Assembly: GCF_001194135.2 (NCBI RefSeq)
Contig: NC_068992.1
Location: 61,343,496-61,401,764 of the forward strand
Length of the DNA stretch: 58,269 bases
From: Octopus bimaculoides
Lineage: Eukaryota
Direction: 5' to 3'
The notes beneath the pieces were generated by a model that saw only the letters and a program-made list of their open reading frames with translations, made no database searches and was not told where the DNA came from. Each line of letters opens with the position of its first letter. The stretch's first letter is position 1. Position numbers and translations under genes: made by a program. This document shows positions 6,485-42,639 of this stretch, one piece after another.

Positions 6485-9400
6485 GGTGGTGGCGATGGTG
6501 AGTACATAGTGAAAATTAATTTGTTTTAATTGAACTAAGTTTTTTTATATCACATATCACTTAATGCATGCACATCCCAAACTTGCCATCCGCTTTAGAA
6601 AGAAACCAGTTTCCCGTTTGCCTGTCATATGCAATGACTATCAATAAATCATGAGGGCTATTCTTGCCTGAGCCTGTATTCGGCCATGTCAGCTATATGT
6701 TGGATTCTCAAGGGCTCGCAAATTATCTGATGTGAGAGTTAAAGTTATCAACACTGACAAACAAGGGAAAAGAAGAGGGAGAACTTACATGAAGAACATA
6801 GTCTGCAAAGAAGTATTGGATTGAAAGGTGTACGCAAATTGAAATGTGTATTGGCTCTGACTCATTGCCTTGGTTTATAAGTCACCTATGATGTGCTTTT
6901 CAGAGTATGCCATATTGCATTAAATTTTTACCCCCATGAAATTGTGATCCCTATATTTTACATATAAAGTAATTTTTTTTACTATAAAATTTTTGTTTTC
7001 TAGATATGAAATTGTGACCATATAAATTTTAAAATGAGAATTTATTTTCCTTTATGGGTAAAATGGAAAAATAAGAGTGAATATTCATTTTATGAGTGCT
7101 GTGTATTAAGTCTATAAAATTATGCACAAAGCGTATATATAAAGTGTATTAAGTAATCATATTCCAATTTCCTTCACTTTTCAATGAATAGCAGACGAAT
7201 GACTATCTTTTGATACAGACACAACACAGGCTATGCTTTCAGGCTTTTTGGATAAAGTTTTCAAGAATAACCGAATAAGTTTACCATTAATTCTGTGAAA
7301 TATTCACAGATTCCACTAGTTATTATTATTATTAAAAAGGCAAGCTGGTAGAATTGGTAGAGCACTGGAAAAAATATTTTGCAGTATTTCGTGATACTTT
7401 ACATTCTATGTTGAAGGATAAACTTTGCTTTTCATCCATCTTGGGTTAATAAAATGAAGAACTAGCCATCAGAAACTTCTTCACCAGAAATTGCTGATAT
7501 TGTGCCTAAATCAGAAAGCATTATTTTAGGCACTGAACAGACATTGGACAAAATACCTTGTAATGTTTGTTCCAGCTCTTCAAATTCCAGTGATGATGAT
7601 GATGAGGAGGAGAAGGAAGAGGAGAAAGGAAAAATGATGGGAGTAAGAGGAAGGGGAGAAGGAAGGAGAGGAGGCAGAGGAAGAGTAGGCAGCAGTGGCA
7701 GTAGTGGAGGAAGAAGCGGAAACAGAGGAAGAGAAAGATGCAAAGAAGAAGCAGAAGAGGAGGAGGAAATGACAATGAAGACAAAAGTGGTGATGGTGTT
7801 GTTAATGATAATGATGATGATGATGATGAACTGTTGCTGCTAATGATGATGATAGTGATGGTAATGATGTCAATGATGATGGTGATGATGATGATGATGA
7901 TGATGAGTACTTACCAATGCATTTGGTGTCTGGTTGAGATCCAGAACTGTGATTACAGTGAACGGAACTTTGCACTTATGATCAAATTTCCAAGGCTTAT
8001 CCATAATAGCTTTTACGTAGTATCTTACATATCCGGTTCCTCCTTCATATGACGATGGAATATTGTACGGAAGCATAAACTCAAAAGGATAGTGATGCTC
8101 TCCGCCATTCAATATCACTTGATTAGCTCCCATAACTGGACCTACAAGAATATGTGTGCATAATGAAGAAAATATTTATATTGGTACATAAATGTATGTG
8201 GATGTTTATGGTTACATGTTTTTAGGTATAGGCATGACAGTGTGGTTAAAAAGCAGCTTTGCAATCAGATGGCTTGGGGTTCAGTCCCACTGAGTAGCAC
8301 CTTGGGTAAGTGTCTTCAGTGGACAACCAAAGCATTGTGAGTGGGTTATACTGTCAAGGAATAATGCTTAACTACACCAAAATTCCAATTCTTCAGATGT
8401 TAAACAGTTATGTTCACTTTCATGGTTATAACCAAAAACACTTTTTACAGAAAAGCTAAAAAGTATTCTTATATGAGTTAATATGAAACCCTTTATGTGG
8501 ATACTAAAGTTGCTAGAAATGGCAACCAAATCTCATTTAAATCATGCCCTACTGTCTTAAGAAAGGAAAAACATACTGGATAATGTAGATGCAGTCCTGG
8601 ATGTACTATTTCTGGGGGAAAAAATGATGAGACAGTCATGGTTGGAATGCTTTTGCTCATTAATTTGTTTATTGAAGGCTGACCTGTGTCTAAATAACAA
8701 CAAAATATATATTTATAATTAAATAATATGGGAGAGGTTTACAAAAGAGAAAGGTTTGTGTGTGTGTGTGCATGGATGCATGTCTGTGTGAGTGTATTCG
8801 AACACATACAATGGGACCTTACCTGAGCCATAGAGGATGACAGTATAATCAAAATAGTTTTCATGGGCTGAGTAATGTCGTGTTGTGGTGCTTCTGTTTT
8901 TACCACTTCCAGTCGAATGCCTTTCTGTCCAATGGACACGAGATTCCCCTTTTAACTCCAGACGGACACCTAAGGAAGAAATCAGTGCAATATTTAATTA
9001 AAAATATAGTCCCACAAAAAGGTAGTGAGCTGGCAGAACCATTTACATACTTCACAGCATTTTCTAATACTATGTTCTGAGTTCAAATTCTGCCAAGGTT
9101 GACTTTGCTTTCATCCTTTTGGGGTTGATAAAATAAGTGTCAGTTGAACACTGGAGTCAATGTAATCAACTTGTTTCCTCTCCCAAAATTGCTGGCCTTG
9201 TGCCAAAATTTGAAACCTATATAATCCCACAATTACTAACCCACAAACATTCTTTTCCCACACTCTTCGAACAGTCACTGCTTCTCTAAATTTGTTACCT
9301 GTATACCACTCAATGCACTCACCTTTGCTTTTCTTTGTCACTCCTTTCGTTTCATTTGATCTACTAAATTAGGGTTAGGGTTCTACTAAATACTTTACCC

Positions 9401-12400
9401 AATCCTTGTACCCCTGTGCTACATGTATGTAATGTCTCAAACTTTCCTTATTTTATCTCCTACGGAAGTTCAAACTAGACATCAACTGAATTGTTCCCAC
9501 TACTATAGAAAGGTCTACCAGAGATGCAGACATTATCCTTACTCTGCAGACAAAAAAGAAAGAGAAAACAAAAAAGAGTGTGAAAATATTTATAAACTGC
9601 AACTGGGACAATGTATTAACATAGAAATTTAATGCACTTTGATAAAAACAAAATCCTTTTGGGGTTAAAACAACTCATTAACATTTCAAATGTTGAATAC
9701 TAAAATCTGCCTATCAACTCTCAATGGAATGTTGTTTTGTAAACCACCTAATTTTGTAAAATAGAAGTACAATTCACCATTTTATAAGTATGTCAGTACA
9801 TACATACATACATTTGAACATTCATTTCTCCATGCTTCATTGAGGTAAATTTTTCTACACACAGATGTTCTTCCTGTCACTAATCATCACATTTCCAAGC
9901 AACACACACACATAAGCATGAATGTGCATATTGATACAAACAGAAGGTAGGTTTGGTGAGATTGGAGAGATGCTTGAGTAAAAACAAATAGAAGTGTGCT
10001 GTGTGCAAGAGGTACGATGGAAGAGTGCTTCAGCCAGACATTCAGAGCCAAAGAATACACACACATATATATATACTTATATAAGATGTATATGCATATA
10101 TAGATAAACATACATGTACACCAACACACATACATTTGTATATACGTTCATATAGAAAACTTAGGATCCCTACATGCAATCCAATTCTCCCACTTTCTCC
10201 TTTCTCCCTCTCTTTCACACTCATTTATTACTGTTATTCATTCATTTATCTAATTTTGCCACAGTTTGGCTGACTGAATACTGTTGGTTATAGCTCTAGT
10301 TAAGAATGCAAATGTCCAATTCTATCTCTTTATTATTATTATTGTTGTTATTCTTTCACACTAGCAGCCAGAGTGTTTGCTGTTTTGTGTTGTTATTCAC
10401 CAAGCGGTTTGTTATGATGGCAAGTTAAATTCAATTGTTCAATTATGTTACTCTAAATCCTGAAAATTCCATCTCTTCATGTTTTGTCTTTGGTCAGCCT
10501 AACTCTGGACTTCCTCTCTCTCTCCCAGTTCCATTAACCACTTGCTTCTCCCAACATGACAACATGAAACCCCCCGCCATATAAATTAGCTCTATTTGGA
10601 TTCCCCTACCTCATATTTTAATATCTTGCTATATACAGTTAAAGTCAAAGAAGATGTTCAGATAAGCAACTTTGTTTCCAACCTAGCACACATCTAAAAA
10701 ACCTCTTTTCACAGTGCAAGTTAGGATTACTTTATCATTTCATTATCTATCTATGCACCCACAGTTTTGTCTTCCATGCCATATGTTAGAAAAACCTTAA
10801 GATCCCTACGTACAATCCAATTCACCCTCTCTCACACACTCATTTATTACTGTTATTCATTCATTTATCTAATTTTGTCACAGTTTGGCTGACCGAATAC
10901 TGTTGGTTATAGCTCTAGTTAAGAATGCAAATGTTCAATTCTATCTCATCATTATTATTATTGTTCTTGTTCTTGTTATTTTTTCACACCAGCAGCCAGA
11001 GTGTTTGCTGTTTTGTGGTGTGTTCACCCCCACCACCTATACCGGAAGTCTTTGCCGCTGACCTCTATTGGATGACTTTCTCCTAAACACCTCCAATGGC
11101 TTAAATGCTCCCCCATCCCTACTTAGTGTTTATCTTCTATGGAATGTAGCTGGTCTCAAAGTTTCCTGACCCAGGATGAGTGTTAGACTCATCACTTTAA
11201 GCCAGAGACAAAGAGACCATCCATCCAATGGACACATCTCTCTTTACCTGCTCAAAAAAAACAAAAAAAAACAAGGTCATTTCATCTGCAGGAAAGATGA
11301 TGGCCTCGGTTATTTGGTATGCAAAAGGCATTGTACTTATTGACTACCTTCAAAAGGGCCACATCACCAATGGAGAACACTATGCCAACTTGCTGAGGTA
11401 GTTACCAAATGCTCAGGAAGACTGGCAAAAGGGGTCTTCTTTCATCATGACAATGCTCCAACACACATGTTCTTGGTTTCAATGGCTGCTATGCATGACT
11501 GTAGCTTCGATGTAGATGATCACCATCCCTATTCTCCTGATTTGATCCCATCTGATTATCATTTGTTCATGAACATGTAAAACACATGGTTGGGGACCAG
11601 TATTGCAGTGATGATGACATCATATCTTATCTTAATGACTGTTTTGGCCAACAGAATGAAAGCTTCTTCACCAGTGGCATCTAAGCACTGCAACACTGTT
11701 GCTAGAAGTGCGTGGACCGCAAGTGGGGACTAGGTTGAAAAATAAACCTCATTTGGTCACATTCCATGAGAGTATTTTTGTCAGCCTATAAATTTTTCAT
11801 TCAAACCTCATATTTATTGTATGGCCAACCTCAAAAGAAACCTCACACCACTGATATATATATATATATATGTGTATATATATATATATATACACATACA
11901 TTTATATATTTACACACATATACATACATATATATATGTATGTATAAAGGTAAGGTTATTTATTTTATTTTTATACTAACTCAATAATACTAATTCAAGT
12001 ATTATAATTACAACTGTGTTCTGCACAATCTACGTGCATTAGACAATACAGAGCAATTTACCTCCTCAAAGATGAATCAGCTTACAAAAAGAAAGCAAAT
12101 GAAAAAATTAAACAGATATTCATTATGATATGATGATTACATACAAACTTTTGATTTGTCATTTGAAGAATGTTGGTTGTTCCAAAATTCAGACGTTGGT
12201 CTGCAGTCTTGCATATAAAATATGCTATGTTGTAGTCAACTGACCATATACAGAATATGCAAAATAAATCATCATTTATACATTGCAATAATAATAATAA
12301 AGAATTAGGGCACAAGCAAAGCTAACCTTTTATTCAATCCTTCATTGTAGATTACATAAAGCTATTGGTCTAACCTTTAAATCTATCCTATGTTCAGTTT

Positions 12401-13396
12401 CTGATTCAAAGTGGGATAACATTTTATCCATTTTGTAACAGGTTTTGTGTTTTATATCTATTATATCCATATTTATTCCAGTATGACTTTTTGTGTTGTA
12501 TCTATAATTAAGTGTGACTGACATTTATTGAATGGTATAGCATTGTTGCTTTTTTTCCTGGTAGTAGAGTAGTAAAATCCATTTTTATAGTATCCTGTGA
12601 TCCCACGGTTGTCTTACCATAAATATCAATGTTCACACTGGACAGAGAGAGAGAGAAAGAGAGAGAGCCTATTTTTCTTTTCATCTAAAAAATAATTTAT
12701 CATGTCACACATTCAACACTTCAAAGATGTCCACCAGGTAAGCTAGAGTTAGCTGAAAGCCTTCAGACTGGAACTTGTCATGGAAATCTGCCTCCTGCTG
12801 CAAATCTAGAGTTATTGCTGCTATTGTAGTTCATAAAGCCATCTAAGTATGTTCCCCTTTGATAGCCATTGTACATTCGTGTGAAAAAGCAATGATTCAT
12901 GTTCAGATTCCTTATCTATACATAACAGTTTGAAAACACAACTGTTTAAGGCCCTGCCTTGAACAAAGTTGACAACCTTGATAGCCATGTTCAGGACATA
13001 TCTCATTTCAGTAGGTAAGGTTCTGGATGCTGAGGATTCATAATGAAGTATGCAGTGTGTACCTACAACGGATAGATTTCTTTTTCTTTCATCCTAGAAA
13101 TGAATCCAGACTGCAGACCAAGCATGGCTGGGGTTCCATCAGTGCACATCTCTACCAGCAAATCCCACAAAAGTTGTTTTTCTGAAAAAAGTTTGATACC
13201 CCACGAAAAATAGCTGCTGCTGCTGTACAACTATCCATAGGGTGACAGAACAACATTTCCTTTTCTACACAGTTGCCTGACACAAAACAAGTATATACCA
13301 GTAGCTGAGAACACTGAGCGATGTCAGTCGTTTGTGTATGTATCAGGTACATGCATAAAAAAGGGGATGTCCCACTAGACATACTGAGTTGTCTTA

Positions 13397-13448
<52 letters not shown>

Positions 13449-14122
13449 ATACATAGTCTAATATATAAATCTCATTCTGTCCGGTTTTTTTTTGTGCACT
13501 TATAACTTGAGTATTGTTCATCTGATCACGCTGAAATTTTAAACATGGATACATGAGAGAGCGGAGCGTTCCGTAATCTAAAAAGATTTTCAAAATTGTC
13601 AGTTTCAAAGTGAGAATTGCTATTTTTGTAATGCTTGTCTGTCCATTGGATAATTAAAACTTACATTTTTATTTTTATTCGAAACTAATGTTATGTATCC
13701 CATTATTCTTACCATTACATCAGTGAAAATCGAAATAAAATACTTAAAGCAACAGTTATCAAATGCAAAAGCTGAAGAACTGTTAATTGTTTATTTGGAG
13801 ATAAAACAGCTTTCAGTCTGGCATATAGGTGTCAACATGAAGTATGCTTCAGTGCAAAATGTTTAAGGTTATTTATGATTTCTATGGGTGGATGCTCTTC
13901 CTGTTGCCAGCTCTCACTTGTTTCCAAATAATGTAATATTTTGACATGGCTCTGTCATGATTACCTGAAAGACTGGAAATGAAACAAATTGTTTTTATGA
14001 TGGTGATACTTGCTTACAACTATCAAGTGATATCAAGGAGAGAAGACAGTAACATACATACTATGTATGTATGCATCTAACAATCTATATACATATATAT
14101 ACATATATATATATACATATAC

Positions 14123-14162
<40 letters not shown>

Positions 14163-14556
14163 NNNNNNNNNNNNNNNNNNNNNNNNNNNNNNNNNNNNNN
14201 NNNNNNNNNNNNNNNNNNNNNNNNNNNNNNNNNNNNNNNNNNNNNNNNNNNNNNNNNNNNNNNNNNNNNNNNNNNNNNNNNNNNNNNNNNNNNNNNNNNN
14301 NNNNNNNNNNNNNNNNNNNNNNNNNNNNNNNNNNNNNNNNNNNNNNNNNNNNNNNNNNNNNNNNNNNNNNNNNNNNNNNNNNNNNNNNNNNNNNNNNNNN
14401 NNNNNNNNNNNNNNNNNNNNNNNNNNNNNNNNNNNNNNNNNNNNNNNNNNNNNNNNNNNNNNNNNNNNNNNNNNNNNNNNNNNNNNNNNNNNNNNNNNNN
14501 NNNNNNAGCGATGGAGTGCCAACAACAACATATACATATATATATATATATAAGCT

Positions 14557-14601
<45 letters not shown>

Positions 14602-15226
14602 GTCATCCCATAAAAAATGCATTTTTTCAATTGCATGAACTAAAAGTTGGAGGAGGATGGGATAAACTATATAAACTACTTGCTTCAACTTGCTATAAAA
14701 ACAGGTAGTTATTCTACCTTATTCTTAGTGTCAGTTTTGAAGAGTTCAGTTCGATTTTAACAGTTATTTTTCAAAGCTATAATGGAAGTGACAAAGGAGT
14801 ATATTTGGGATATTTTGCTTTATTAGTTCAATAAGGGAAGCAATGCAACGGAAAGTGTAAGGAATATTAATGCAGTATTTGGGGATGGGCAATAAGCATA
14901 GGCCAGTGTCAACGGTGATTCCAGAAATTCTGAGCCAGAAACTACAGCTTAGAAGATGAGTCTCATCCTGGTAGATCTGTAGAGATCGACAGGGACGGTA
15001 TCGATTACAATTATAAAGAAACCGTATAGATTACGATTATAAAGAAATTTGTGGGGAAAATCTTTTCCGAGGGGGTGGGGAGAGAACTTGGGAACATTGA
15101 CAAGATCCGATATTTTTCCCTCGTAACTTTGAGGAAAGTATAATTCCTTTGAAATCACAAATTAGGCTTTTCCTCAGGAACTTAGATGCTAAACATCCCT
15201 TTGACGGGTTCGGGTCCTTACTTCTA

Positions 15227-15268
<42 letters not shown>

Positions 15269-18200
15269 ATAGAAGCAAGGACCCGAATCCTTCAATGGGA
15301 TGTTTAGCATCCAAGTTCCTGAGGATTATATTTTCCACAAAGTTACGAGGGAAAAACATCGGATCTTGTGAATTTTCTGAAGGCCTCTCCCCACCCCTGT
15401 TGCTTTCTGGGCATTTTTATTTCCATATTCGTTTCCTACATCTTTTTTTTTTTTTACACCCGTTGAACTATTTTTTTTTTCTGGATTTTGTTTCCAGGTA
15501 ATAATGTCAACATTAACCCATTTTTTTTTACACTTATACTTTCTTTTTTGTTTTGGTGGCCGGGTGTTAAACTAGATAACCGTTTGTTGTTGATAAGTTT
15601 TGTCCTTTGAACCAGGCTTGTCTTCATAATCCTCCTGGTTCGTGTTAGCAAATGGCTTACGATATATCTTTATGGTGAAGCACTCAACACAGATTTCACA
15701 AATACACACAATAAAATACTAGTTAAGGAAAGACTAAAAGACTATTAATAGACAAAGAAGCAGTCATGTAGAGAGAGAGGGAAGAGTCGTTAGTTATACA
15801 ATTAGATAGATGAATCTATCGATAATAAGCTTCGTTGAACAACGAAACGAGGATTACGATCAGAAGAGAAAGACAGTAGGAAGAATGATATATTTAATCA
15901 TTCCTCCCCACTTTTATTTTAAATATTTTATTCATATCACATATTCTTTTCTGTAACTGAATCTGGAATCTGGCCAAATCAAAACAAACAAATACTGTGC
16001 ATGTTTGCATTTTATTCAACATTTAAATACATATATAAAGTTGGGAGCATATTTTGTTCTCAGTTCATCTCATTTGCTAGTTAATACATTTAATCGGTGT
16101 TACCTTCCTGTTAATAAAACTACAAGAAAATTAGTTGTTTGAGAGCTCTCCAATAATCTCTAAAATATATATATTTTTTAATATCCTACATTGACGAGTG
16201 GCATTCTTTTTGCGAAGTTACCTCGTGACTTCGCCTTAATTAAGAATAATACTAGAAGACATCAAAAAGTAGATGAATACCCGAGCTAATGAGGAAACCT
16301 TCACGTGGTTAGAAGACCTATGAGAAACAACAACCAATTCTCACTCAATTCATATTCTATCGTCTTAATGAAAGCAAAAATATTTGATAATGTAGTCCAA
16401 TATATATATAAGACATAAATGGCTTTTCTGTTTTCGAGTATAGAACTGTTGACACATGCAATAAAGTGCCTTTGTCAGTTAATAGCTGCTAGGACATTTT
16501 AGTGTTTCAAAACTTCAGTGCTTTTCAAAATTCACCAACACTACTCCTGACATGCCTATGCAACCTTTCCTATGTATGGCTCTTTTACTGTTCATTTTTC
16601 TGTCTTTTTGTGTTTTATCTGTGTATCCTGTATGCATTTTTGGCTATCATTGATGCTTTTCTTTGCTTGATTTATTGAGGCTTTCTGTTTCCTCTTTTAC
16701 CCTTTTTCCGACAAGCTGTACCTGAGCATTATATATTATAAGCTCATAATTATTAACACTTTTCAAGGCGGTGAGCTGGCAGATTCGTTAGCATGCCCAG
16801 CAAAATGCTTAGCAGCATTTTGTCCATCTTTTCGATCGGTCCAGCTTGTCTCCTTTTTCTGAGTCGATAAAATAAGTACCAGTCGAGTAATGGCTCGATG
16901 TAATTGATTAGTCCCCTCCCCCCCGACCTTTCAGGCCTTGTACCAAAACCTGAAACCATTATTGTTAACGCTGCCAAGGCAACGAGGTAGGAAAATCATT
17001 TAAACGTCGGTCAAAATACTTAACGATATTTAATCTGGCTTTATGTTCTGAGCTCAAATCCCACCGAGGTTGACTTTGTCTTTCGTGGTCGATAGAATAA
17101 AGTACCAGTGAAGTAATGGAACCGATGTATTTGATTTTTCCGTCTCCCTACAAAACTGCCGGCTTTGTTCCAAAATTAGAAAGAATTATTGTTGACTCCT
17201 CGCAGAACTCGTCTGGCACTCTCCACTCTTTGCAACAAAAAATCGGTTAGCTTATACGACTTCGTCGTAAAGCATTCGCCGATAAAAATATGGAACAGCA
17301 CCAAGTCAGAATACAAACACAAACCCGTCAGCGACAAGATGTATCAAATTTTGAATGACAAAACAGAACAAGTTGTTTCCACTCTCATTTACATGACACC
17401 CATTTTATGCTACGTAGTTTCTTAAGCACAAAATTATTTCAATTAACATATTAATCTTATCAAATTTTAAAATAGGACAAGACAAGAGAATAATAAAATG
17501 GTTAAGACGATACCACAGCGAAAATTTGATACGGTAATGTGTGTATAGGAGCCCATATATCTAGCGCCTACAGGCGATCTTTCGTTTTCCCTACAGGAAG
17601 ATTGCCATTTACATGTTCTTTATGGTACAATGCCAAGACAAACTAAATCAGTTTGTTTAAAAGAGCACTAACCCAATTCAATGAGATAACACCAATAGCA
17701 TAAGACCCTATTTGTAGAAGAGCAAGTACCCACACATTAGATCAGTTTCATACACACGCGTAAATGAGAAAGTACTGCTCAATATTAGTTGTAGAGGATA
17801 TAGTTTTAACTAAAACTGAATCCGAGAATTTGTCTTGTGACTCGAGTTTCACGCCGCTATGATCTTCAGATTAGAGATGGTAGTGGCATGAACCTCGAGA
17901 CGCGAGCCAAAGTTTCAGTGTTGATTAAAAAATAATACTACGTATGAGTGCATTTGTCTGTATGTATATATCAGGTCATCCCATAAGTTCTGTCCGAATT
18001 TTGAATAAAGAAAACACGTGATCAAATGTTATATTTAATTGAAATTTAAACATCAGCGTACTTTCCCTGATTACCTATGACTTCCTTCCATCTATTTACA
18101 AGCTTTTTAATCCCATCAATGTAAAACTCTTTTGGTTTCAAAGCGAAGAACTTTGAAATGTCAGTTTCCACCTCCTCCTGGCTTGCGAAAGTTATGTCCC

Positions 18201-20512: not shown

Positions 20513-20549
<37 letters not shown>

Positions 20550-26862: not shown

Positions 26863-26937
<75 letters not shown>

Positions 26938-28536: not shown

Positions 28537-28580
<44 letters not shown>

Positions 28581-28701: not shown

Positions 28702-28753
<52 letters not shown>

Positions 28754-30700: not shown

Positions 30701-30884
30701 TATGTGGCTCAGGAGTTATGAAAATGTTCGAATACATTTCTAACTTTCATTTTCAGTAAACCGGTCAATGAAAAGTTTGTTTTCTAAAATTTAGGATAAA
30801 TGTAAACAAGCAATATTTAATTTGTAATGTGCTATTTTGTTTTTGGATAAATCTTGTAAGTCTGTGCTAAAAGTTTCGGTAAAT

Positions 30885-31965: not shown

Positions 31966-32449
31966 CAAATAATACCTAAGTTTCTTATTTTGAGAAATGT
32001 TTCATTTTTAATGTGCTGTTTATTGCATTAAATGCATTTTGAATGCTTTAAACTACAAAATACATGTTATTTATTTGTTCTTTTTTCTGTCATTGAGGTG
32101 GTTATGAGGTGTGCAAAGATTACAGCGAAATAGGCCTTAAATCATGCATCCCCCAACAATTTTTTCAGCATAATTGTATGAACTCCTGTGAGTAGAATAT
32201 AAATTTGCAAAAACTTTCTGAAAATTCGAAAAGCTTAAAAAGTTTTGAGGGGACATATGTTCTGTGTAATTCATTTGTTTATGGTTTTATGTAAAAATAC
32301 ATGTGCTATTTCCAGGATGTTGACAAAATGTGCAGTCGTGCACAAAATGACAGCTTCCAAATCCTGTTTCCTGACTGGGTGAAAATTATCAAACTTTAAA
32401 CCTCAATAACTTCTTTAAAAAAAAATTTCTGGAAAAAGTGAAATATCTC

Positions 32450-33034
32450 GGATCTTTTTTAAAACGGGGGCCACATTTTTCATTAATGTTTTACGTAGTG
32501 TTTTTGGTACCGAAAGACTTTCAAACTTCGTATACTTATCTATTTTGTGTTATAGAACAGAAAAATATTTTTGTATTCGAATTTATTTCATGTAAAAAAT
32601 TGTCTTATTTCGATAATTTCAACCAATCACTGACAAGTATTCAGTTGTTTATATTTACTCCTTTGGCTGATTAAGCCATAACTTCGTTTTATTTGCTTTT
32701 TTCATTTTCTTTTTTTCTTCTTCGTTTTATTTGCTTTTTTCTTTTTAAATTTGCTGTTTTACCCTAACCCTAACCCTAACCCTATCACCGATAGAATTGT
32801 TTCAGAATCGTTTGTTTATGTAGTCGGCACTTAATGTATATCGGCTGAATGGACATCAGTGATTGGTTGAAATTACAGAAATACGACAACTTTAACATGG
32901 AATAACTTAGGGATTTCTTTTTTTTTTAAGAAGACTAAGAGAAAAAGATGTTTTATATGACACATTCTACCAGTGTTCCAAGTTTCAAAGTGTTTCGTTA
33001 ATGAAAAATGTGGCCCCCGTTTTAAAAAAGATCC
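32450..33034. mobile_element. 585 bp MITE with perfect 37 bp TIRs and an 8 bp TSD
   Basis: TIR GGATCTTTTTTAAAACGGGGGCCACATTTTTCATTAA at 32450-32486 and its exact reverse complement at 32998-33034; AATATCTC at 32442-32449 and 33035-33042; internal (TAACCC)n. Confidence 0.95.
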
Positions 33035-33520
33035 AATATCTCCAGCAATTCAGCTTGGAAAACTACATTAATGAACCAAATTTTAAAATTTTCAATAAAC
33101 TTTGATTTTTTTGAAATCTTGGCAGCCAAACAGGAATGACCCATTTCTGGTTTGAAATGAGTCATGATTAAGAACACAAAGAAATACAAAGGTTTTAATT
33201 GATTGCCACATTTTATTTTGACGCCTAATTAGGGTAGAGTAAGCTGGTACATGAATAATACTGTTAGAAAATATACACTTAGTTTCTCATGCAGTTGGTA
33301 CTTGGCAATGTGTGCTGGATGGAACACAGCGGTGTGTCAATACTCTCTGCTGAATAACTCTCTTCTCTGAGCTAGCTTACAGGAAATTCTTTATTTATAG
33401 CTGTCATGAGGCTCCGGCAAACCAACACAGTTTGCCACACTTTGCTGGTCTGGCAAGTGGTCTGATTGGATAACATAAAGCATCCAATTGCCACAAATGG
33501 GCTTGGTCAATGTGTAAACT

Positions 33521-33530
33521 GTCACGTGAC
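33521..33530. promoter_or_regulatory. Palindromic E-box GTCACGTGAC with nearby CCAAT boxes
   Basis: 10-bp palindrome; ATTGG at 33465-33469 and CCAAT at 33484-33488. Motif only. Confidence 0.3.
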
Positions 33531-34014
33531 CCTATCATATGACCACTTGCAGAAAACAAGTGTGATGAGCCGATATTTACCTATTTAAGTGTAATTGATT
33601 GAATAATAATAGCCATATCTCTGCTACAACTACCCTTGCATCAGTATAGTGCAGTTTTCAATTTCTCTGTCATATACAAAGAGTTACACAAGTTTGCAAG
33701 AGATGGGCAAGCAGTTAACACGACTTGGCATGTTACCATTGAAACAGGCATTAATACGTCCATGGATTTTGATTAGCTAAAATTACCCAAAATTTGCAAA
33801 CTTTAAAAGCTAGTAACTTTTTAGTTATTAATTTAAGATAAAAATGAATTTCATTTCCATAATTAGCATACAAGACTACATGAATACACTAAATTTGAAA
33901 TCAATTGGAACAAAATTGAGAGGAGTTGAAAATTGAAAGCCAAACAGAAAAGATCCTTTTCTTTCCATTGCCTCGTCACTGGCATAATTTGATGACAATA
34001 ATTGAAGATTTCTA

Positions 34015-34190
34015 GCAGATTTAGAGTTGAGCTTGTGGCAGTGGAGACCTCCAGCATTCTTGGCTCCTGGACCGCATCCCTGCTCATTACTATCAAGGTG
34101 GAAATAGCTGTCTGCAAGTGTGAGCCCCGGGATTCAGAGTGGCTGTTTCAGTGCATCTCTCTCATCATCCTCTAGGATAATTCCTTTTCT
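34015..34190 (+). mobile_element. RLE-type (CRE-like) LINE 3' remnant
   Basis: VAVETSSILGSW...CEPRDSEWLFQCISL; homologous to the inverted copy at 36490-36830. Confidence 0.65.
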
Positions 34191-35956
34191 ATTTTGTCTG
34201 CTGGTGCCAGGGAAGTAACCTATGACAATGTTTAACAGCAGATATCATAAATAATCTTTGTATAGTGTATAACAACATGTATTATACTAATAAGAGGGAG
34301 AAAAATATTATAAACACTGAAGTTTCCTTCTTTCTCTCCCCCACTCACTAATTTTACTTTTTTTTGTACGTTCCTTTCTTAGTTACATTCAACTCTAAGC
34401 AAGTCAGTTTCATACACTAACTAATTCTTTTGTCTTTTATGTCAGATGTACTTGTGTCTGCGTGTGTGTGTATATATATTTCTTTATTGATCAGAAAGTC
34501 TACTGTCTTGTTACAGGCTGAATTTAGGACGTGAGTCTTTTGTTATGCTTAGATTCAAATCTATTTTGTTATTCTTCACTATTTGTTGTATATAATATAA
34601 TATAATATAATATAATATAATTTTTCTTACTATAGTCACAATGCCCGATATTTTGTGGATCAGTGCTCAATTGGTACTTATTTTGTCAACCCTAAAAGGA
34701 TAAGAGGAAAAGTAGGCTCCAAAAGAAACCAACCTTTGAGTTTATATCACTCAGAAAAGATCTTTATTCATATTCATATATATACATACATATATACATA
34801 TACATATATATACATATGTACACACATATACATATGTAAATATACATATGTACATACATATACATACATTTATACATACATATACATATATACATACAGA
34901 CATACATACAAACACACACACACACATGTAGTCCTTTTTAAACAGACACTGGATGTTTGTCTCACATTTCAAGGCTCACAAAAGATCACAGTGACATCAA
35001 ATTCATGTCACAAGATAGATTCTCAGCTTCGGTTTTAATCAAAACTATATCCTCTCCAACATGCATTGAGCAGTCCTTTCTCATTCATTCGCAGGTGGGT
35101 ATAAAACTGATCTAATGAGTGGGTATTTGCTCTTCTAAAAATAATCTTATCCTATTGGTGTTATCCCATTGAGTTAAGATTGGGTTAGTGCTCTCCTATG
35201 CAAACTGATTCAGTTTACTTGTCTTGGCATTATGTCATAAAGAATATGTGAGTATGATATGGAGACTTCCACATACATTACGGTATCAAACTTTTGCTGT
35301 GGTATCGTTTTAGCTATTTTATTATTTTCATGACCTGCCCTATTTCAAAATTTAATAATACTAGTGTGTTAATAAAAACATTTTTAATGCTTAAGAAACT
35401 ACGTAGCATAAAATGGGTGTCATGTAAATGAGAGTGGAAACAATTTGTCATTTTATTCAAAATTTTGTACATCTTGTCACTAAAGGGTTCATGTTCCTAT
35501 TCTAACTTGGTATTGCACTATATTTTTTTTATCAAAGATTAGTTTACTATGAAGTCTTATAAACTAACTGATGTTAGTTGCAAAGAGGGTAGAGTACTAG
35601 ATGAGTTTTGAAAGGGGTTGATAATAATACTTTCTAATTTTGAAACATGGCCAGCAATTTTCTAGGAAAGCAAGAAAATCAAATACATCACAACATAATT
35701 CCAAATTAAATGTCACTAAGCATTTTGACCGATGTGCAAATGATTTTCCCACCTCGCTGCCTTGGCAGTGTTAATAATAATGGTTTCAGATTTTGGCAAA
35801 AGACTGGCAGTGGCCACGCTCAAAATAGTGTATTTTACGTGCTACCTGCACAGGAGCCAGTCCAGTGGCACTCGCAATGATCTCGCTCGAATGACATTTC
35901 ACTTGCCACCGGCACAAGTGTCAGGAAGGCGACGCTGGTAACAATCGCGCTATTAC

Positions 35957-35989
<33 letters not shown>

Positions 35990-36009
35990 CATCATCATTA
36001 TCCTTATCA

Positions 36010-36043
<34 letters not shown>

Positions 36044-36489
36044 GAGAGATAGCACTTGCATTTAAGTGGATTTTCGCCTGTCTTTACATTCTGGGTTCAA
36101 ATCCTGCTGAAGTTGACTTTGCTTTCTGTCCTCTCGGGGTTGATAAAACAAGTACCAATTGAGTACTGGGATTGATGTAATTGACTAGCTCCCTACCCTG
36201 AATTTACTGGCCTTGTGCCAAAATTTGAACCCAATATTTAACAATTATTCCTTAGTATAGCATTTATATAACATTTATATAATAAGCAAGAGGTAAAAGC
36301 ATCAAGACTTGATTCCAAAACCGTTTTGTTACAAAACCACTCATCTATTCATTTTGGATAGAGTGGTAACCCATGTCTTTGAAACATGGATTACTGGTTT
36401 AACAGTGTTTGTGTAATAGGCTACGAAATTCTTACATTTTCTGGATTTCCTGTAATTCAGACGCTTCATGATCCCAGCAAACAAAATGG

Positions 36490-36830
36490 AGAAGACATTA
36501 CTCTGGAAGATGGCGATTGAGATGCACTGGAACAGCCATTCTGACTACTAGGGCTTGCACTTGTGGATTGCCATCTCCACCTTGATAGTGGTGAGCAGGG
36601 ATGTTCTCCATGGGCTGAGAATGCCATAGGTTTCCACTATCATAAGCTCAACCATAAACCTGTTAGAGTGTGACTGATACTTTGACTAGCAGCAGTTGCT
36701 GCTAGAGAAGGTGTTGCATCGTTTGGGATTCTGGATGAGGGGCTTACTGCCATGGAACAGGAAAATTGTCATACCATGAGGCCTTTTACCATCCCTTCAG
36801 TTTAGCCTGACGGGCTCCTGCTGGGTTTAG
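36490..36830 (-). mobile_element. RLE-type (CRE-like) LINE 3' remnant
   Basis: RDGKRPHGMTIF...RFMVELMIVETYGILSP resembles the DGKRPDG.T endonuclease motif. Confidence 0.7.
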
Positions 36831-36879
36831 GCTGGGTTAGATTAATTTTATTTATAAAATCTGAGAGACCTTCACCATT

Positions 36880-37310
36880 TGTGTGTGTCGTGCTGATTGA
36901 AGAAATGGGTACAGTTGGCAATTACGAGGGCTTTGCTGCAGAAATTGTGTGACATCATCAATGCAGAGAGCTGTGGCATGCTGACCAAAGGAATCCACCT
37001 CCTCCAAGACAATGCCCAGTCCACAATGTGCATGTTACCCAGATGAAGCACACTCCTGCGACTATGAAATCCTTTCTCATCATCCCCCTTACTCTCCTAA
37101 CCTCACACATCCTACTTCCACCAGTTTTCAACCATGAAGTCTTTTTTGAAAGGGAAGTACTTTTCGGATGATGATAAACTTATTTCTGAGGTAAAGCATA
37201 GGCTCCAGACGCAACCGACCAACATGTACAGACAAGGTTTTCACAGCTGCATAAAATGATAGAAGTGTGTCACCATTGGTGGTGGCTATGTAGAGAAGGA
37301 CTAATAATTA
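36880..37310 (+). mobile_element. mariner C-terminal remnant
   Basis: Degenerate KGIHLLQDNA and HPPYSPNL motifs. Confidence 0.7.
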
Positions 37311-38349
37311 TGCCAAGTTTTATTTATCCCAGTCCTTGGGAAGTAGGTCAGGGGAAATCTTTAATGAACACCCCTTGTATGTATACTGATAGTTGAGTGG
37401 TTGCTGTTATTTCCAGCTGTCAGGAATCTGCCATTGACAAGGCCGTGGAAGGCCAAAATCCTGTGATCTGGAAGTCTTGGTAGCAGCAATTGCTGTGATT
37501 GTGTCCTGCTAGTAATGTAAACGAGAATACTTATTTGCATCATAAACCCATATGAGTGGTTCCCTCATGGTAACTGTCACAGTATTCTGTGTTCCAACAC
37601 AACATCCAGAATAAATATCACAATGCACTTTTCAGATGCTCTAACAATTCTGTCAGCTTGTTACTTTAGACAAGGATGAGAATAATAAAAAGAATATGAG
37701 GGATGGATTATGGTGTTGCATTTCTAGAATAAAGGCATACTCCTAGGAGTAAACATTTTTATATTCTTCTCTTGAAGTAAGATGACATTCTTATCTCTTT
37801 TACCAGTGTGACATGATAAACTTTATTTTTTTTTAGATGAAAAGAAAAGTAGATTCTCTCTCCTTCTCCTCCCTCCCTCTCCCTCCCTCTCTTCCTCAAT
37901 CTCTCTCCTTCTCCTCCCTCCNNNNNNNNNNNNNNNNNNNNNNNNNNNCCCTCCCTCAATCTCTCTCTCCCTCTCTCTCTCTGTCCAGCGTGAACATTGA
38001 TATTTATGGTAAGACAACCTTGGGTTCACAGTATACTATAAAAATGGATTTTACTATTCTACTACCAAACAAAAAAAGCATAAAGAACAATGCTACACCA
38101 TTCAATAAATGTCAGTCACACTTAATTATAGATTCAACACAAAAAATCATACTGGAATAAATATGGATATAATAGATATAAAACACAAAACCTGTTACGA
38201 AATGGATAAAATGTCATCCCGCTTTGAATCAGAAACTGAACATAGGATAGATTTAAAGGTTAGACCAATAGCTTTATGTAATCTACAATGAAGGATTGAA
38301 TAAAAGGTTAGCTCTGCTTGTACCCCAATTCTTTATTATTATTATTATT

Positions 38350-38361
38350 ATTATTATGATT

Positions 38362-38418
<57 letters not shown>

Positions 38419-38837
38419 GATGATGATGTTGTAATAAAACTCACAGCTTATGTTGCTGGGTATGATGGAAAGTGTCAGCTGCCCACAGCCAGCAGACTAA
38501 GGCAACACTTGTTTTACTGGTCATGCTTCAAGAACCTTGCGAAGAATTCTTGCAGTTCCAAGCGATGCTGATCTTTGTAGGTGTTCTACTTTTACACTTG
38601 CTCCAGTCTTTTTCAGCCATGTTGGTAGTTGAGTGCTGACACTTCCAAGTGTACCAATTACTATTGGTATCACGTCCACTCTCTTCATTGACCACAACCT
38701 TCGTATTTCTCACTTCAAATCATCATAGTTGTTTATTTTTTTCTTCTTTCACACTGACCCTGTTGTCACCAGGGCATGCTGTATTAATTATCATACATGT
38801 TCTTTGTTTTTTATTCCCCACAACAATGTCTGGTCTA
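38350..38837 (-). mobile_element. 5'-truncated R4/Dong-like (RLE) LINE inserted in a (TAA)n tract
   Basis: RPDIVVGNKKQRTCMIINTACPGD...EIRRLWSMKRVDVIPIVIGTLG...SLGTARILRKVLEA*, followed by a (CAA)n/(TAA)n tail; the empty site is visible at about 12285-12300. Confidence 0.8.
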
Positions 38838-39150
38838 TTATCATTATTATTCTTGCAATGTATAAATGATGATTTATTTTGCATATTCTGTAGAATTTGG
38901 TCAGTTTACTACAGCATAGCATATTATTGTATATGTAAGAAGTTTGTATGCAATCATTATCTCATAATGATTATTTTTTATTTGCCTTTGTTTTGGTAAG
39001 CTGCTTCTTCTTTGAGGAGGTACCTTGATCTGTATTGTGTAATGCATTTAGATTGTGCAAGAACATAAAAATAATTATAATACTTGAATTGAGAGTCTTA
39101 ATATAACAATAAAATAAATAGCCTTTCCTTATATATACATACATATATAA

Positions 39151-39197
<47 letters not shown>

Positions 39198-39429
39198 TGT
39201 GTGTGTACATGGATGAGTGGATATATGAAAGAAAGTGTTGTAACACATTTTGTTAGTAGTTGGTTCTTAACTCCCTCTTGTTTATCATAGTTCTCCAATC
39301 TATAACTGAGGAATTTAAAACTGGCTGTTCTTGGGAGCTCTTCTTTGCCTTGTTCTTATTGCTGAATTACTACCAGAACTAGAGAAGAAATTTCAGGTGT
39401 GGGAGGAAGGTCTGGAACCAAAGGGCCTT

Positions 39430-40270
39430 AGAGTTAATTTAGCAAGACCATAATATTGATAAGCAGGAAAACTGGCAAATTGTAGATCTCTTTAAGGAGA
39501 TGGCCCTGCATGATATGTAGAAAAGGTGTTGGGAGAAACTTCATAAAGTGTATCTGGTGCAAGCTAGAAACACATAAGGGGTGCATCAGTATCACTGGAT
39601 GACTAACGGAGAAAGTAGCCTTCACATGTGGCAGATGTGCAGGTACATTAAACACCAGGAATGTACAAAAAATAGACTTCCCCATATGACATGGAGGATA
39701 CCTAGAAGTAGGAGACAGTTTGTGTTACTTAGGTAATCAAGTTTGTTGCAGAGGTGGTTGTTCTGAAAGCATAAGAGTAGGCCAGGAGAAATTCAAAGAG
39801 TTACTGCCTCTGTTAGTAACAAAGGGCCTCTCCCTCAGAGTAAAAGGCAAATTGCACAATGCCTCTATACAATTGGATCAACCTTTGACAGACTCTCCTC
39901 CTCCTCCTATTCATTCTCCACATTCAGCAGTCTTTCAAAATGGCTTCTCCAAGCCTCTTTCTTTGCAGAATCATTAAACGCAAGGGTACCATCATCCATA
40001 TGGATACATTTCTCTCCTATGACATCATGGTTTTCTCTCACACATTGTTTTGCAATCTGAAATACTTCAGATCTCTTTTCTGCTACTCCCTTGGCTATAT
40101 ACACCTGTCCCTTAGCTTCCCTTTTGGCTATCTGATACATTTTCCTGCTACCCCCACTCTTCCAGGTTCCAGGCCTGTTCTAATGGCCCTGTCTACAGTA
40201 TTGACATACTTCTTATTTCTTGCATGCACAACATTTCTACTTATTTTCACTCAAATATCTCTATAATCTC
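39430..40270. mobile_element. Two RTE LINE fragments in opposite orientation (39430-39870 +; 39900-40270 -)
   Basis: GQEKFKELLPLLVTKGLSLRVKGKL on plus; VFQIAKQCVRENHDVIGEKCI...KKEAWRSHFERLLNVENE on minus. Confidence 0.8.
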
Positions 40271-40460
40271 ACCAGACCTACTTTCTAATTGTATCAAAAC
40301 ACACACAAACACACACATGTGTATATATTGCCTGAAAACATGTGATGATTAGTGAGATGAAGAACATCAGTGTGTAGAAAAATCTACCTCAGTGAATCCC
40401 CTCTGGTTCATAAAGTATGGAAAAGTGGATGAAAAAATAAGGATAATGACGTATGTATCC

Positions 40461-40492
<32 letters not shown>

Positions 40493-41360
40493 CTGTATGT
40501 ATGTATGTAGGTATGTATGTGCTGACATACTTATAAAATGGGGAATTGTACTTCTATTTTACAAAATTAGATGGTTTACAAAACAACATTCCATTGAGCA
40601 TTTGAAATGCTAATGAGTTGTTTTGACCCCAAAAGGATTTCGTTTTTATCAAAGTGCATTAAATTTCCATGTTAATATATTGTCCAGGCCACAGTTTATA
40701 AATATTTTCACAATGTTTTTTGTTTTATCTTTCAAATTCCGATGTTTTCATTGAGAATATTTCTCTTATTTGTTTTTGTCTGCAGAGTAAGGATAATGTC
40801 TGCATCTCTGGTAGACCTTTCTAGAGTAGTGGGAACAATTCAGTTGATGTCTAGTTTGAACTTTCGTAGGAGACGAAATAAGGAAAGTTTGAGACATTAC
40901 ATACATGTAGCACAGGGGTACAAGGATTAGGTTAAAGTATTTAGTAGAACCCTAACCCTAGTTTAGTAGATCAAACGAAAGAAAAGGAGTGACAAAGAAA
41001 AGCAAAGGTGAGTGCATTGAGTGGTATACAGGTAACAAATTTAGAGAAGCAGTGACTGTTCGAAGAGTGTGGGAAAAGAATGTTTGTGGGTTAGTAATTG
41101 TGGGATTATATAGGTTTCAAATTTTGGCACAAAGCCAGCAATTTTGGGAGAGGAAACAAGTTGATTACATCGACTCCAGTGTTCAACTGACACTTATTTT
41201 ATCAACCCCGAAAGGATGAAAGCAAAGTTAACCTTGGCAGAATTTGAACTCAGAGCATAGACAGACAAAATGCTGCCAAGTGTGTAAATGGTTCTGTGAG
41301 CTCGCCGCCTTTTTGTGGGACTATATTTTTAATTAAACATTTCACTGATTTCTTCCTTAA

Positions 41361-41491
41361 TGAAAAGGGGAAGCTCACGTGCATTGAACTGAAGTGGAGT
41401 CTTCTGACAGTGATGAGAGTATTTTCACCACAAAGCAATATCACAGCTCATGACAATTATTTTAATAATACTGTCAACCTTTATGGCTCAT
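41361..41491 (+). pseudogene. Pseudo-exon 2 of the ARRDC duplicate
   Basis: KGEAHVH*TEVESSDSDESIFTTKQYH(fs)AHDNYFNNTVNLYGS versus KGESRVHWTERHSTGSGKNRSTTTRHYSAHENYFDYTVILYGS. TGG to TGA at 41385-41387, 2-nt deletion, acceptor AG lost with a ~14-nt deletion. Confidence 0.92.
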
Positions 41492-41552
41492 GTAAATTCT
41501 CATTATGTGAAACTAAGTACATGCCTGAATACACCCACACAAACATTCTTCT

Positions 41553-41593
<41 letters not shown>

Positions 41594-42639
41594 AGTTTGC
41601 ACATGCAGACGCACTTAAACCTTTCACTTTTGCAAACCTCTCTCATATTATTTCATCAGGAATATATATTTTGTTGCTATTTATCCACAGATCAGACTTC
41701 AATAAACAAATTTATGATCAAAAGCATTCACATCATTTTTTTTTTTTTTAGAAATAGTACATCTAAGACTACATCTACATTATCAACTACGCCCTTCCTT
41801 CTTTGAGAAAGTAGAGTATGATTTAAATGAAATTTGGTTACCATTTCTAGCAAGTTGACTGATAAAATAGAGGGTTTCTTAGCAACTCATGATAAGAATA
41901 TCTTTTACCTTTACTGTAAAAAGGTGTGTTGGTCATAAGCACTAAAGTGAACATAACTGTGTCTTAACAGCTAATAACCAACAAAAGTACTTTATTGCAG
42001 GCTTCAAAAGTTCTATACACACTTCTCACACTTCTTGTGCACAAAACCTTCTTCATCTATTTCTATCTGCCTCTCTACCTGTCTGCTGCATTTCTTTCTT
42101 TACTACCTTCCATTTCTTCCTCTGTCCATCTCTATTAACTACCTACTGTCTATCTTTATTCACATTTTTCTCTGTACTCTCTCTTTCTTTGTACTTGCTC
42201 TTCCCCAACCTTCACTATTCCACTCTGTCTCCCTTTCTTTGCTTCTAGATGCCAAAAGACCATCCAATTTTTTATCACTCATCTTTTTTCTACTTGACCA
42301 GTGCATAGGTAAGACATGTATTTTGTTTCATCTCCTGCCTAGCACTCGCTTCAGACCCTCAGTCTACCTTTTCACTTTTCATTCTTTTCTTTCCTTCTAT
42401 CTTTCTTCCCTTCTGTCCCATCTTTCTGTCCTTCTTCTGAGCCCTCTCATTGTACCTTTGGAACATAAGCACCACTATTTTCTTCCTTTTTTGTTAATTT
42501 TCGTCATGTAGTGTCCCACATTTTGAAATACTTGCAATTTGTATTTTTACTGTTTATGTTTGCTTCACTTGATATATTTCCAAAATTAAACATTTCAATA
42601 TATAAAATATATTTCATATTATTACATATACTAATTGTC

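What the first reader, a model, noticed from the sequence alone, without database searches (positions are those of the whole stretch)
8380..41970. Hidden head-to-head inverted duplicate of the ARRDC gene, now a partial pseudogene
Five homologous blocks occur in mirror order about a centre near 25-26 kb: intron 2, exon 2, proximal intron 1, the 12 kb block and the 17.5 kb block. The copy of exon 2 has a stop, a frameshift and a destroyed acceptor. It also carries many synonymous third-position changes (GTC/GTG, ACA/ACT, TCG/TCT, GCC/GCT, AAC/AAT, CTC/CTT), and its loop changed from basic RHSTGSGKNRS to acidic VESSDSDESIF. This suggests it was a functional, diverging paralogue before it died. 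I found no exon 1 or exon 3+ homologue in the copy. The ORF track does not show this.
Basis: seen in the sequence. Interest (0 to 1): 0.7.

Follow-up and report, generated by a model that had tools for sequence, protein, structure and literature searches.

The report
Inverted partial ARRDC gene duplicate, dead fragment
About 14 kb of an alpha-arrestin (ARRDC) gene, covering most of intron 1, exon 2 and part of intron 2, was copied long ago in inverted orientation just upstream of the gene, leaving a broken exon-2 fragment; this is an ordinary kind of genomic relic.

Summary
Window 8396-22343 and 41972-28320 form a collinear inverted chain of 11 blocks. The chain score is 3523, against 250-371 for control comparisons. 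The arms are mirrored about ~25.3 kb.

The ARRDC gene lies on the minus strand. Its exon 1 (23694-23574) sits in the ~6 kb single-copy spacer between the arms. Only exon 2 has a copy (41359-41491, + strand).

That copy has lost its splice acceptor through a 14-bp deletion. It also carries TGG>TGA, a probable second TGA and a 2-bp frameshift.

- The duplication ends inside intron 2 and holds no exon 1 or exons 3-6.
- dN/dS is 0.43, which is what a constrained parent plus a neutral copy gives.
- 13 of 26 scoreable residues invariant in three outgroup homologues are changed in the copy, against 1 in the parent alone.

New here: arm identity is a mosaic. Most tracts differ by ~20%, but two tracts (9067-9807 and 12290-12666) differ by only ~5% (P 7e-35). 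Patchy arm-to-arm gene conversion is the best explanation.

The gaps do not undermine the homology. Arm adjacency depends on one join inside a SINE.

Ordinary; low interest.

The parts
8396..22343 (.). Arm A of the inverted duplication. It holds 427 bp of ARRDC intron 2, exon 2 and most of intron 1.
   Evidence: Collinear inverted chain of 11 blocks; sharp outer boundary at 8396.
28320..41972 (.). Arm B, the inverted copy of arm A, lying upstream of the ARRDC promoter region.
   Evidence: Its blocks are two-copy in the window.
22344..28319 (.). Single-copy spacer of ~6 kb between the arms. It holds exon 1 and the presumed promoter, plus SINE, LINE-like and microsatellite sequence.
   Evidence: A sensitive comparison of the two halves finds only multi-copy SINE and microsatellite matches.
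23574..23694 (-). ARRDC exon 1 coding part (MGKLRSLAIHFNNPSRVYYGGQRLNGFVQIVLNEPMKVR + G), followed by a gtaagt donor.
   Evidence: tblastn with remembered ARRDC3 and TXNIP N-termini; sequence read. The Pfam Arrestin_N match of the spliced model starts at HMM position 2.
8823..8969 (-). ARRDC exon 2 (147 nt, functional), encoding the conserved HWTERHSTGSGKNR loop.
   Evidence: The loop is identical in homologues P0002-P0004.
7915..8141 (-). ARRDC exon 3, not duplicated.
   Evidence: no copy found.
5834..6016 (-). ARRDC exon 4 (start of Arrestin_C), not duplicated.
3751..3933 (-). ARRDC exon 5, not duplicated.
665..887 (-). ARRDC exon 6. Its 5' boundary is inferred. The gene continues beyond the start of the window.
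41359..41491 (+). Pseudo-exon 2. Lesions: acceptor and first 12 nt deleted (junction 41358|41359); TGA at 41385-41387; probable TGA at 41361-41363; 2-bp deletion near 41443|41444. The loop at 41394-41426 differs at 17 of 33 nt. The donor GT at 41492-41493 is kept.
9067..9807 (.). High-identity tract 1 (partner 41263-40511). Identity is 95.2% and K2P 0.049, against ~0.25 in neighbouring tracts. Proposed gene-conversion tract.
12290..12666 (.). High-identity tract 2 (partner 38343-37960). Identity is 94.4% and K2P 0.058. It is bounded by microsatellites. Proposed gene-conversion tract.
   Evidence: No RNA structure signal and no Rfam hit.
17962..19096 (-). Mariner-like element with terminal inverted repeats, present in arm A only. 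The homology block ends at its repeat, so it inserted after the duplication.
   Evidence: Pfam Transposase_1, E 1.2e-18; terminal repeats 17962-18001 / 19057-19096; block end at 17971.

Best explanation
This is an old inverted segmental duplication of the 5' part of an alpha-arrestin (ARRDC) gene.

A segment of ~14 kb was copied in reverse orientation into the region upstream of the gene. The segment ran from a point inside intron 2, through exon 2, across most of intron 1. The near end of the copy now lies ~4.6 kb beyond the exon 1 start codon. Parent and copy are therefore head-to-head around a ~6 kb single-copy spacer that holds exon 1.

The copy carried one internal coding exon and no promoter-proximal or downstream exons. 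It was therefore a non-functional, unprocessed pseudogene fragment from the start, and it has drifted neutrally. It lost its acceptor, gained stop codons and a frameshift, and replaced half of the invariant residues.

Both arms were later remodelled by transposon insertions (for example a mariner in arm A only) and by microsatellite growth. About 31% of the arm length still aligns.

Two patches, 9067-9807 and 12290-12666, are far more alike than the rest (~5% versus ~20% difference). The most likely cause is later arm-to-arm gene conversion between the nearby inverted repeats.

Shown: the homology, order and orientation; the lesions; the lack of other exon copies; the mosaic of identity. Inferred: dead on arrival; gene conversion; true physical adjacency of the arms.
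For: - Collinearity: inverted chain score 3523 against 250-371 for controls. All main blocks are two-copy in the window.
- Parent gene: the spliced model matches Arrestin_N (E 3.8e-38, HMM positions 2-148) and Arrestin_C (E 2.1e-31). It also matches the ARRDC3 structure 4r7x (E 5.8e-16). Exon 1 is at 23694-23574.
- Extent of the copy: only exon 2 has a copy. The outer boundary is sharp at 8396/41972.
- Lesions in the copy.
- Neutral drift: dN/dS 0.43; 13 of 26 scoreable outgroup-invariant residues are changed in the copy against 1 in the parent alone.
- Divergence: K2P 0.18-0.29 in eight tracts and 0.049-0.058 in two tracts; Fisher P 7e-35.
- Later remodelling: a mariner with terminal inverted repeats sits in arm A only, starting at the block edge.
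- Gaps: the 24298 gap is a 68-bp unmerged overlap, and the 37922 gap is bridged by arm A.
- Precedent: arm-to-arm gene conversion is well documented for large palindromes (PMC8600007, PMC8327919, PMC8981503; found).
Against: - The exon-2 copy is more diverged than the neutral background: 43 of 141 sites against 19.9% (binomial P 0.0018). The excess is concentrated in the loop (17 of 33 nt, uncorrected P 5e-5). Plain neutral drift does not predict this. I found no donor template for it in the window.
- Gene conversion is inferred only from uneven identity. No GC bias is seen in the high-identity tracts, and selective constraint on those tracts was not excluded.
- Arm adjacency depends on a scaffold join at 24298-24307 that lies in a multi-copy SINE.
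- Genome-wide copy number of the blocks could not be checked.
- The inner end of arm B abuts a SINE array (27743-28341). Whether the original duplication reached exon 1 cannot be told.
Confidence: 0.78

Rival explanations
1. One reading: the copy was once part of a functional ARRDC paralogue. It diverged under selection, changing its loop from basic to acidic, and only later became a pseudogene.
For: - Synonymous differences exceed non-synonymous ones per site (pS 0.43 against pN 0.23).
- The loop holds a dense, in-frame, length-preserving cluster of 17 changes in 33 nt that reverses its charge. This is more than the neutral background predicts.
- The donor GT is kept.
Against: - No exon 1 and no exons 3-6 are copied anywhere in 25-58 kb.
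- Homology ends inside intron 2.
- A pairwise dN/dS of 0.43 is what a constrained parent plus a neutral copy gives.
- 13 of 26 scoreable residues invariant in three outgroup homologues are replaced, including the conserved W and the TGSGKNR core.
- One exon of 49 codons cannot encode an arrestin fold.
Confidence: 0.06
2. Scaffolding artefact: arm B is a real paralogous fragment that lies elsewhere in the genome. It was joined next to the ARRDC gene by a misjoin in a repeat, so the head-to-head palindrome does not exist as drawn.
For: - The only join between the contig carrying exon 1 (20102-24297) and the contig carrying most of arm B (24308-37921) is a 10-N gap inside a multi-copy SINE.
- The window is a draft with ten gaps.
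Against: - The two contig ends share an exact 68-bp overlap.
- The arms lie in mirror order with their inner ends facing each other.
- The ~5% tracts suggest continuing exchange, which is favoured by proximity (inference).
- Divergence of 20% excludes a haplotype or collapsed-repeat artefact.
Confidence: 0.1
3. The two high-identity tracts are conserved functional non-coding elements, such as intronic enhancers or an unannotated RNA, kept by selection in both copies. They are not gene-conversion tracts.
For: - Sharp islands of 94-95% identity sit in a ~80% background.
- Tract 1 lies within ~100 bp of the exon 2 acceptor.
- No GC bias is seen.
Against: - Selection on both a gene and a dead upstream fragment is unlikely.
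- Tract 1 begins with an ordinary multi-copy SINE (9075-9215).
- There is no Rfam match and no excess RNA structure (z +0.3 and +0.9).
- Intermediate identity at the tract edges (K 0.10-0.14) fits overlapping conversion events.
Confidence: 0.1
4. There is no duplication at all: the blocks are unrelated copies of dispersed repeats that happen to lie in mirror order.
For: The window is rich in SINEs and other transposons. One SINE does lie inside block 1.
Against: - 11 blocks lie in strict inverted order, with a chain score ten times that of the controls.
- The blocks are two-copy in the window.
- One block contains a unique coding exon together with its flanking introns.
Confidence: 0.01

Closest known systems
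Unprocessed (duplicated) pseudogene fragments from partial segmental duplication
   Same: The copy keeps intron sequence on both sides of the exon. It lies near its parent, lacks most exons, and carries stops, a frameshift and a lost splice site. Its substitution pattern is neutral.
   Different: Nothing essential. It is inverted and head-to-head with the parent around the parent's own first exon, which is a less common geometry.
Large palindromes with arm-to-arm gene conversion, such as those on primate and mouse sex chromosomes (PMC8600007, PMC8327919, PMC8981503)
   Same: Two inverted arms of more than 10 kb surround a unique spacer, and there is evidence of sequence exchange between the arms.
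   Different: Those palindromes keep more than 99% arm identity along their length and carry intact, expressed gene pairs. Here identity is ~80% with only two ~95% patches, about 31% of the arm length still aligns, and the one copied exon is dead.
Alpha-arrestins (ARRDC1-5 and TXNIP), the family of the parent gene
   Same: Arrestin_N plus Arrestin_C domains. The closest solved structure is the human ARRDC3 N-domain.
   Different: The C-terminal tail, where PPxY motifs would lie, is outside the window, so the subfamily cannot be assigned.

Membership tests
Alpha-arrestin (ARRDC/TXNIP) family - parent gene | Arrestin_N domain followed by Arrestin_C domain | tested here: met
   The spliced six-exon model gives PF00339 at E 3.8e-38 (HMM 2-148 of 148) and PF02752 at E 2.1e-31. 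ARRDC3 structures 4r7x and 4r7v match at E 5.8e-16 and 1.9e-15.
Alpha-arrestin (ARRDC/TXNIP) family - parent gene | C-terminal PPxY motifs that bind WW-domain ubiquitin ligases | not testable with these tools
   No PPxY is found in any minus-strand frame of 1-700. The last exons lie beyond the window start.
Unprocessed (duplicated) pseudogene | Homology extends into the flanking introns, so the copy is not a retrocopy | tested here: met
   Intron 2 (8396-8822) and intron 1 (8970 onward) both align with the flanks of the copy.
Unprocessed (duplicated) pseudogene | Disabling lesions in the coding sequence or splice sites | tested here: met
   Acceptor deletion, TGA at 41385-41387, and a 2-bp deletion.
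Unprocessed (duplicated) pseudogene | Loss of purifying selection | tested here: met
   13 of 26 scoreable outgroup-invariant residues are changed in the copy against 1 in the parent alone. Pairwise dN/dS of 0.43 fits a copy-branch omega of about 1. There are only 40 scoreable codons, so power is low.
Unprocessed (duplicated) pseudogene | No transcription or translation of the copy | not testable with these tools
   No RNA-seq or cephalopod data are available. The look-up of encoding contigs returned nothing.
Gene-converting palindrome (sex-chromosome type) | Inverted arms of more than 10 kb around a unique spacer | tested here: met
   Arms are 13.9 and 13.7 kb and the spacer is 6.0 kb.
Gene-converting palindrome (sex-chromosome type) | Arm-to-arm identity above 99% along the arms | tested here: not met
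   76-84% identity in eight intronic tracts and 94-95% in two. Only ~31% of the arm length aligns.
Gene-converting palindrome (sex-chromosome type) | Direct evidence of gene conversion, from phylogenetic discordance or population data | tested here: inconclusive
   Only uneven identity is available (Fisher P 7e-35). There is no outgroup or population sequence, and no GC bias.

The most novel reading that the evidence does not exclude
The inverted arms are not inert. If a transcript starting upstream of 42 kb on the minus strand reads through arm B into the ARRDC gene, the ~740-bp, 95%-identical inverted tracts (41263-40511 and 9807-9067) would pair into long double-stranded RNA next to exon 2. 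In a cephalopod this could act as an ADAR editing or small-RNA substrate that regulates ARRDC, and selection for that pairing would keep the tracts alike. Alternatively, the charge-reversed loop records a short period of adaptive evolution in a once-expressed chimeric transcript.
Probability: 0.04. Interest if true: 0.55.

Novelty: new member of a known kind. Interest (0 to 1): 0.22.

Why it matters
The finding matters mainly for annotation. The exon-2-like sequence at 41359-41491 should be marked as a pseudogene fragment and not used to build a second ARRDC gene model. ARRDC exon 1 should be placed at 23.6 kb, between the arms.

It is also a small, clear example of how an old inverted duplication decays unevenly. 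Transposons and microsatellites break it up, while patches stay alike, probably through gene conversion.

It does not bear on any open question unless the arms turn out to be co-transcribed.

Tried and rejected
- Looked for a copy of exon 1 or of exons 3-6 in 25-58 kb by tblastn with the window's own exon peptides. Only exon 2 matched.
- Tried to extend the arms into the centre with a sensitive blastn. Only SINE and microsatellite matches appeared.
- Looked for a donor template for the copy's divergent loop, to test a templated-insertion or micro-inversion origin. None was found in the window.
- Tested the 12290-12670 high-identity tract for RNA structure on both strands (z +0.30 and +0.89). 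Ran Rfam over the whole window; the only hit was a U6 at 85-186. There are no tRNAs.
- Tested for GC-biased conversion. GC content does not differ between the ~5% and ~20% tracts.
- Looked for independent assemblies or relatives:
  - Exact-protein look-ups of two window ORFs found nothing.
  - The protein database holds only four fragmentary arrestin homologues.
  - The contig carrying one of them (L001) has no nucleotide similarity to the window.
- A literature search for arrestin-domain genes in octopus found nothing.
- Rejected the haplotype or collapsed-repeat artefact, because the arms differ by 5-30%.
Full report
**Setting.** The window is AT-rich (36% GC), repeat-rich eukaryotic sequence with ten assembly gaps. 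I could not verify the organism, because none of the available collections holds cephalopod genomes.

**The gene.** An alpha-arrestin gene lies on the minus strand. I located its exons by tblastn with human ARRDC3, ARRDC4 and TXNIP sequences written from memory, used only as probes. I then set the boundaries by reading splice sites.
- Exon 1: 23694-23574
- Exon 2: 8969-8823
- Exon 3: 8141-7915
- Exon 4: 6016-5834
- Exon 5: 3933-3751
- Exon 6: 887-665

The gene continues beyond the window start, and no PPxY motif is seen. The spliced 360-residue model matches Pfam Arrestin_N (E 3.8e-38, HMM positions 2-148 of 148) and Arrestin_C (E 2.1e-31). This validates the exon 1 assignment. The exon 2-3 peptide matches the solved human ARRDC3 N-domain (4r7x, E 5.8e-16).

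**Is the mirror arrangement real?** Yes. A self-comparison gives an inverted, strictly collinear chain of 11 blocks between 8396-22343 (arm A) and 41972-28320 (arm B). The summed chain score is 3523 over 4.3 kb.
- Arm A against the same region in direct orientation scores 260.
- Arm A against 42-58 kb scores 250-371.
- Each main block has exactly two copies in the window.
- One block contains a unique coding exon with both flanking introns.

Matches between 24.2-24.5 kb and 27.0-27.4 kb belong to a SINE with further copies at 45.3, 55.1 and 6.1 kb. They are not part of the arms. The arms are therefore separated by a ~6 kb single-copy spacer (22344-28319).

**Gaps, tested first as requested.**
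- The 10-N gap at 24298-24307 is flanked by an exact 68-bp direct duplicate. This is the signature of two overlapping contig ends that were not merged, so the sequence is continuous there. The caveat is that the overlap lies in the multi-copy SINE.
- The gap at 37922-37948 lies in a GA-rich microsatellite of arm B. Homologous blocks lie on both sides of it, and the arm A homologue is uninterrupted there.
- The gap at 18293-18330 lies inside one mariner transposase reading frame that continues on both sides.
- The gaps at 14163-14506 and 19751-20101 lie in microsatellites between blocks and cannot be tested.
- No gap touches exon 2 or its copy.

**The exon-2 copy (41359-41491, + strand).** All lesions are.
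- A 14-bp deletion at 41358|41359 removes the acceptor AG and the first 12 nt of the exon.
- The conserved Trp codon is TGA (41385-41387).
- The codon aligned to TTA is also TGA (41361-41363). The alignment next to the deletion is uncertain.
- 2 bp are missing near 41443|41444.
- The donor GT survives.

The loop RHSTGSGKNRS reads VESSDSDESIF in the copy. No copy of exon 1 or of exons 3-6 exists in 25-58 kb. The outer edge of homology is sharp at 8396/41972, inside intron 2 and 255 bp before exon 3.

**Was the copy ever functional?** The evidence says no, or at least gives no reason to think so.
- Nei-Gojobori counts over 40 scoreable codons give Sd 11 of 25.5 sites and Nd 22 of 94.5 sites, so dN/dS is 0.43.
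- Three arrestin homologues from the protein database (P0002-P0004) carry the identical HWTERHSTGSGKNR...TRHYSA core. The parent exon therefore holds the ancestral state.
- Of 28 sites invariant in these outgroups, 26 can be scored. The copy alone differs at 13, the parent alone at 1, and both differ at 1.
- Nearly all non-synonymous change thus falls on the copy branch, while synonymous change is shared by both branches. This gives a copy-branch omega of about 1 (inference). A pairwise value near 0.5 is what a dead-on-arrival copy of a constrained gene produces.
- The copied segment holds a single internal exon of 49 codons. The simplest reading is therefore a non-functional fragment from birth.

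**An unexplained detail.** The exon copy is more diverged than the neutral introns around it: 43 of 141 sites against 19.9% (P 0.0018). The excess is concentrated in the loop, at 17 of 33 nt (uncorrected P 5e-5). I found no donor sequence for a templated replacement. A complex multi-nucleotide mutation, or chance after multiple testing, seems more likely than selection, but this is not resolved.

**A mosaic of identity (new).** Sliding-window and per-tract distances show two classes.

| Class | Tracts | K2P |
|---|---|---|
| ~20% different | 8396-8822, 9836-10017, 11912-12289, 16937-17051, 17124-17971, 19308-19450, 20987-21059, 21757-22343 | 0.18-0.29 |
| ~5% different | 9067-9807 <-> 41263-40511 | 0.049 |
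| ~5% different | 12290-12666 <-> 38343-37960 | 0.058 |

- The tract edges have intermediate values (0.10-0.14).
- The difference between classes is 55 of 1091 sites against 509 of 2560 (Fisher P 7e-35).
- The ~5% tracts show no RNA-structure signal, no Rfam hit and no GC bias.
- Tract 1 starts with an ordinary SINE.

I interpret these tracts as later arm-to-arm gene conversion. Their lengths of 0.4-0.75 kb are typical for conversion tracts (established knowledge). The process is well documented between inverted arms of large palindromes (PMC8600007, PMC8327919, PMC8981503). This is an inference; constraint is the rival. The first tract stops ~100 bp from the exon 2 acceptor. That would fit selection against conversions carrying the copy's lesions into the working exon, but this is speculation.

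**Later remodelling.** About 31% of the arm length still aligns.
- A mariner-like element lies in arm A only (Transposase_1, E 1.2e-18). Its terminal inverted repeats are at 17962-18001 and 19057-19096, and the homology block ends at its repeat. It therefore inserted after the duplication.
- Arm B carries its own inserts at 29-32 kb, with nested inverted repeats, and expanded microsatellites.
- A K2P of ~0.2-0.29 implies an old event. Without a calibrated cephalopod mutation rate I give no date.

**Mechanism (inferred).** The segment running from intron 2 into intron 1 was copied in inverted orientation into the upstream region of the same gene. A replication template switch or fold-back event could do this. 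The inner end of arm B abuts a SINE array (27743-28341). Whether the original copy reached exon 1 and later lost it cannot be decided.

**Caveat.** The physical adjacency of the arms rests on the scaffold join at 24298-24307. The homology itself does not.

**Verdict.** This is a new member of a well-known kind, an unprocessed pseudogene fragment in an inverted segmental duplication, with a modestly interesting mosaic of identity. Interest is low.

Noticed in passing
window 85-186 (+): Full-length match to U6 spliceosomal RNA (68 bits against a gathering score of 44, E 4.2e-15). It lies on the strand opposite the ARRDC gene, near or within the gene's 3' part. I did not assess whether it is a working gene or a pseudogene.
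   Followed up: no
window 22714-22829 (+), 21418-21584, 32761-32788 (-): Interstitial telomere-like (TTAGGG)n arrays. The one at 22.7 kb is flanked by a 130-nt inverted repeat (22525-22654 / 23002-22878) and lies in intron 1, ~750 bp from exon 1. The one at 21.4-21.6 kb is a head-to-head pair of arrays. They may belong to a transposon family that carries telomeric repeats.
   Followed up: partly
window 17962-19096: Mariner-like element of ~1.1 kb with 40-nt terminal inverted repeats and a decayed transposase ORF that spans the 38-N gap. It is present in arm A only.
   Followed up: yes
window 56590-57123 (+): ORF with a Pif1 helicase 2B domain (E 6.2e-20), probably a Helitron-type transposon fragment.
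   Followed up: no
window 24230-24375 and 50473-50634: The 10-N gaps at 24298-24307 and 50549-50558 are each flanked by exact direct duplicates of 68 and 76 bp. These are unmerged contig overlaps, not real gaps.
   Followed up: yes
window 27743-28341: About three tandem copies of a ~150-bp SINE-like unit directly abut the inner end of arm B. Other copies of the unit lie at 1640-1780, 9075-9215, 36072-36237, 41115-41270 and 57789-57897.
   Followed up: partly
window 41394-41426 (+) versus 8890-8922 (-): The loop of the pseudo-exon differs at 17 of 33 nt with no length change. This is far above the ~20% background, and no donor sequence for it was found in the window. The cause is unexplained.
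   Followed up: partly
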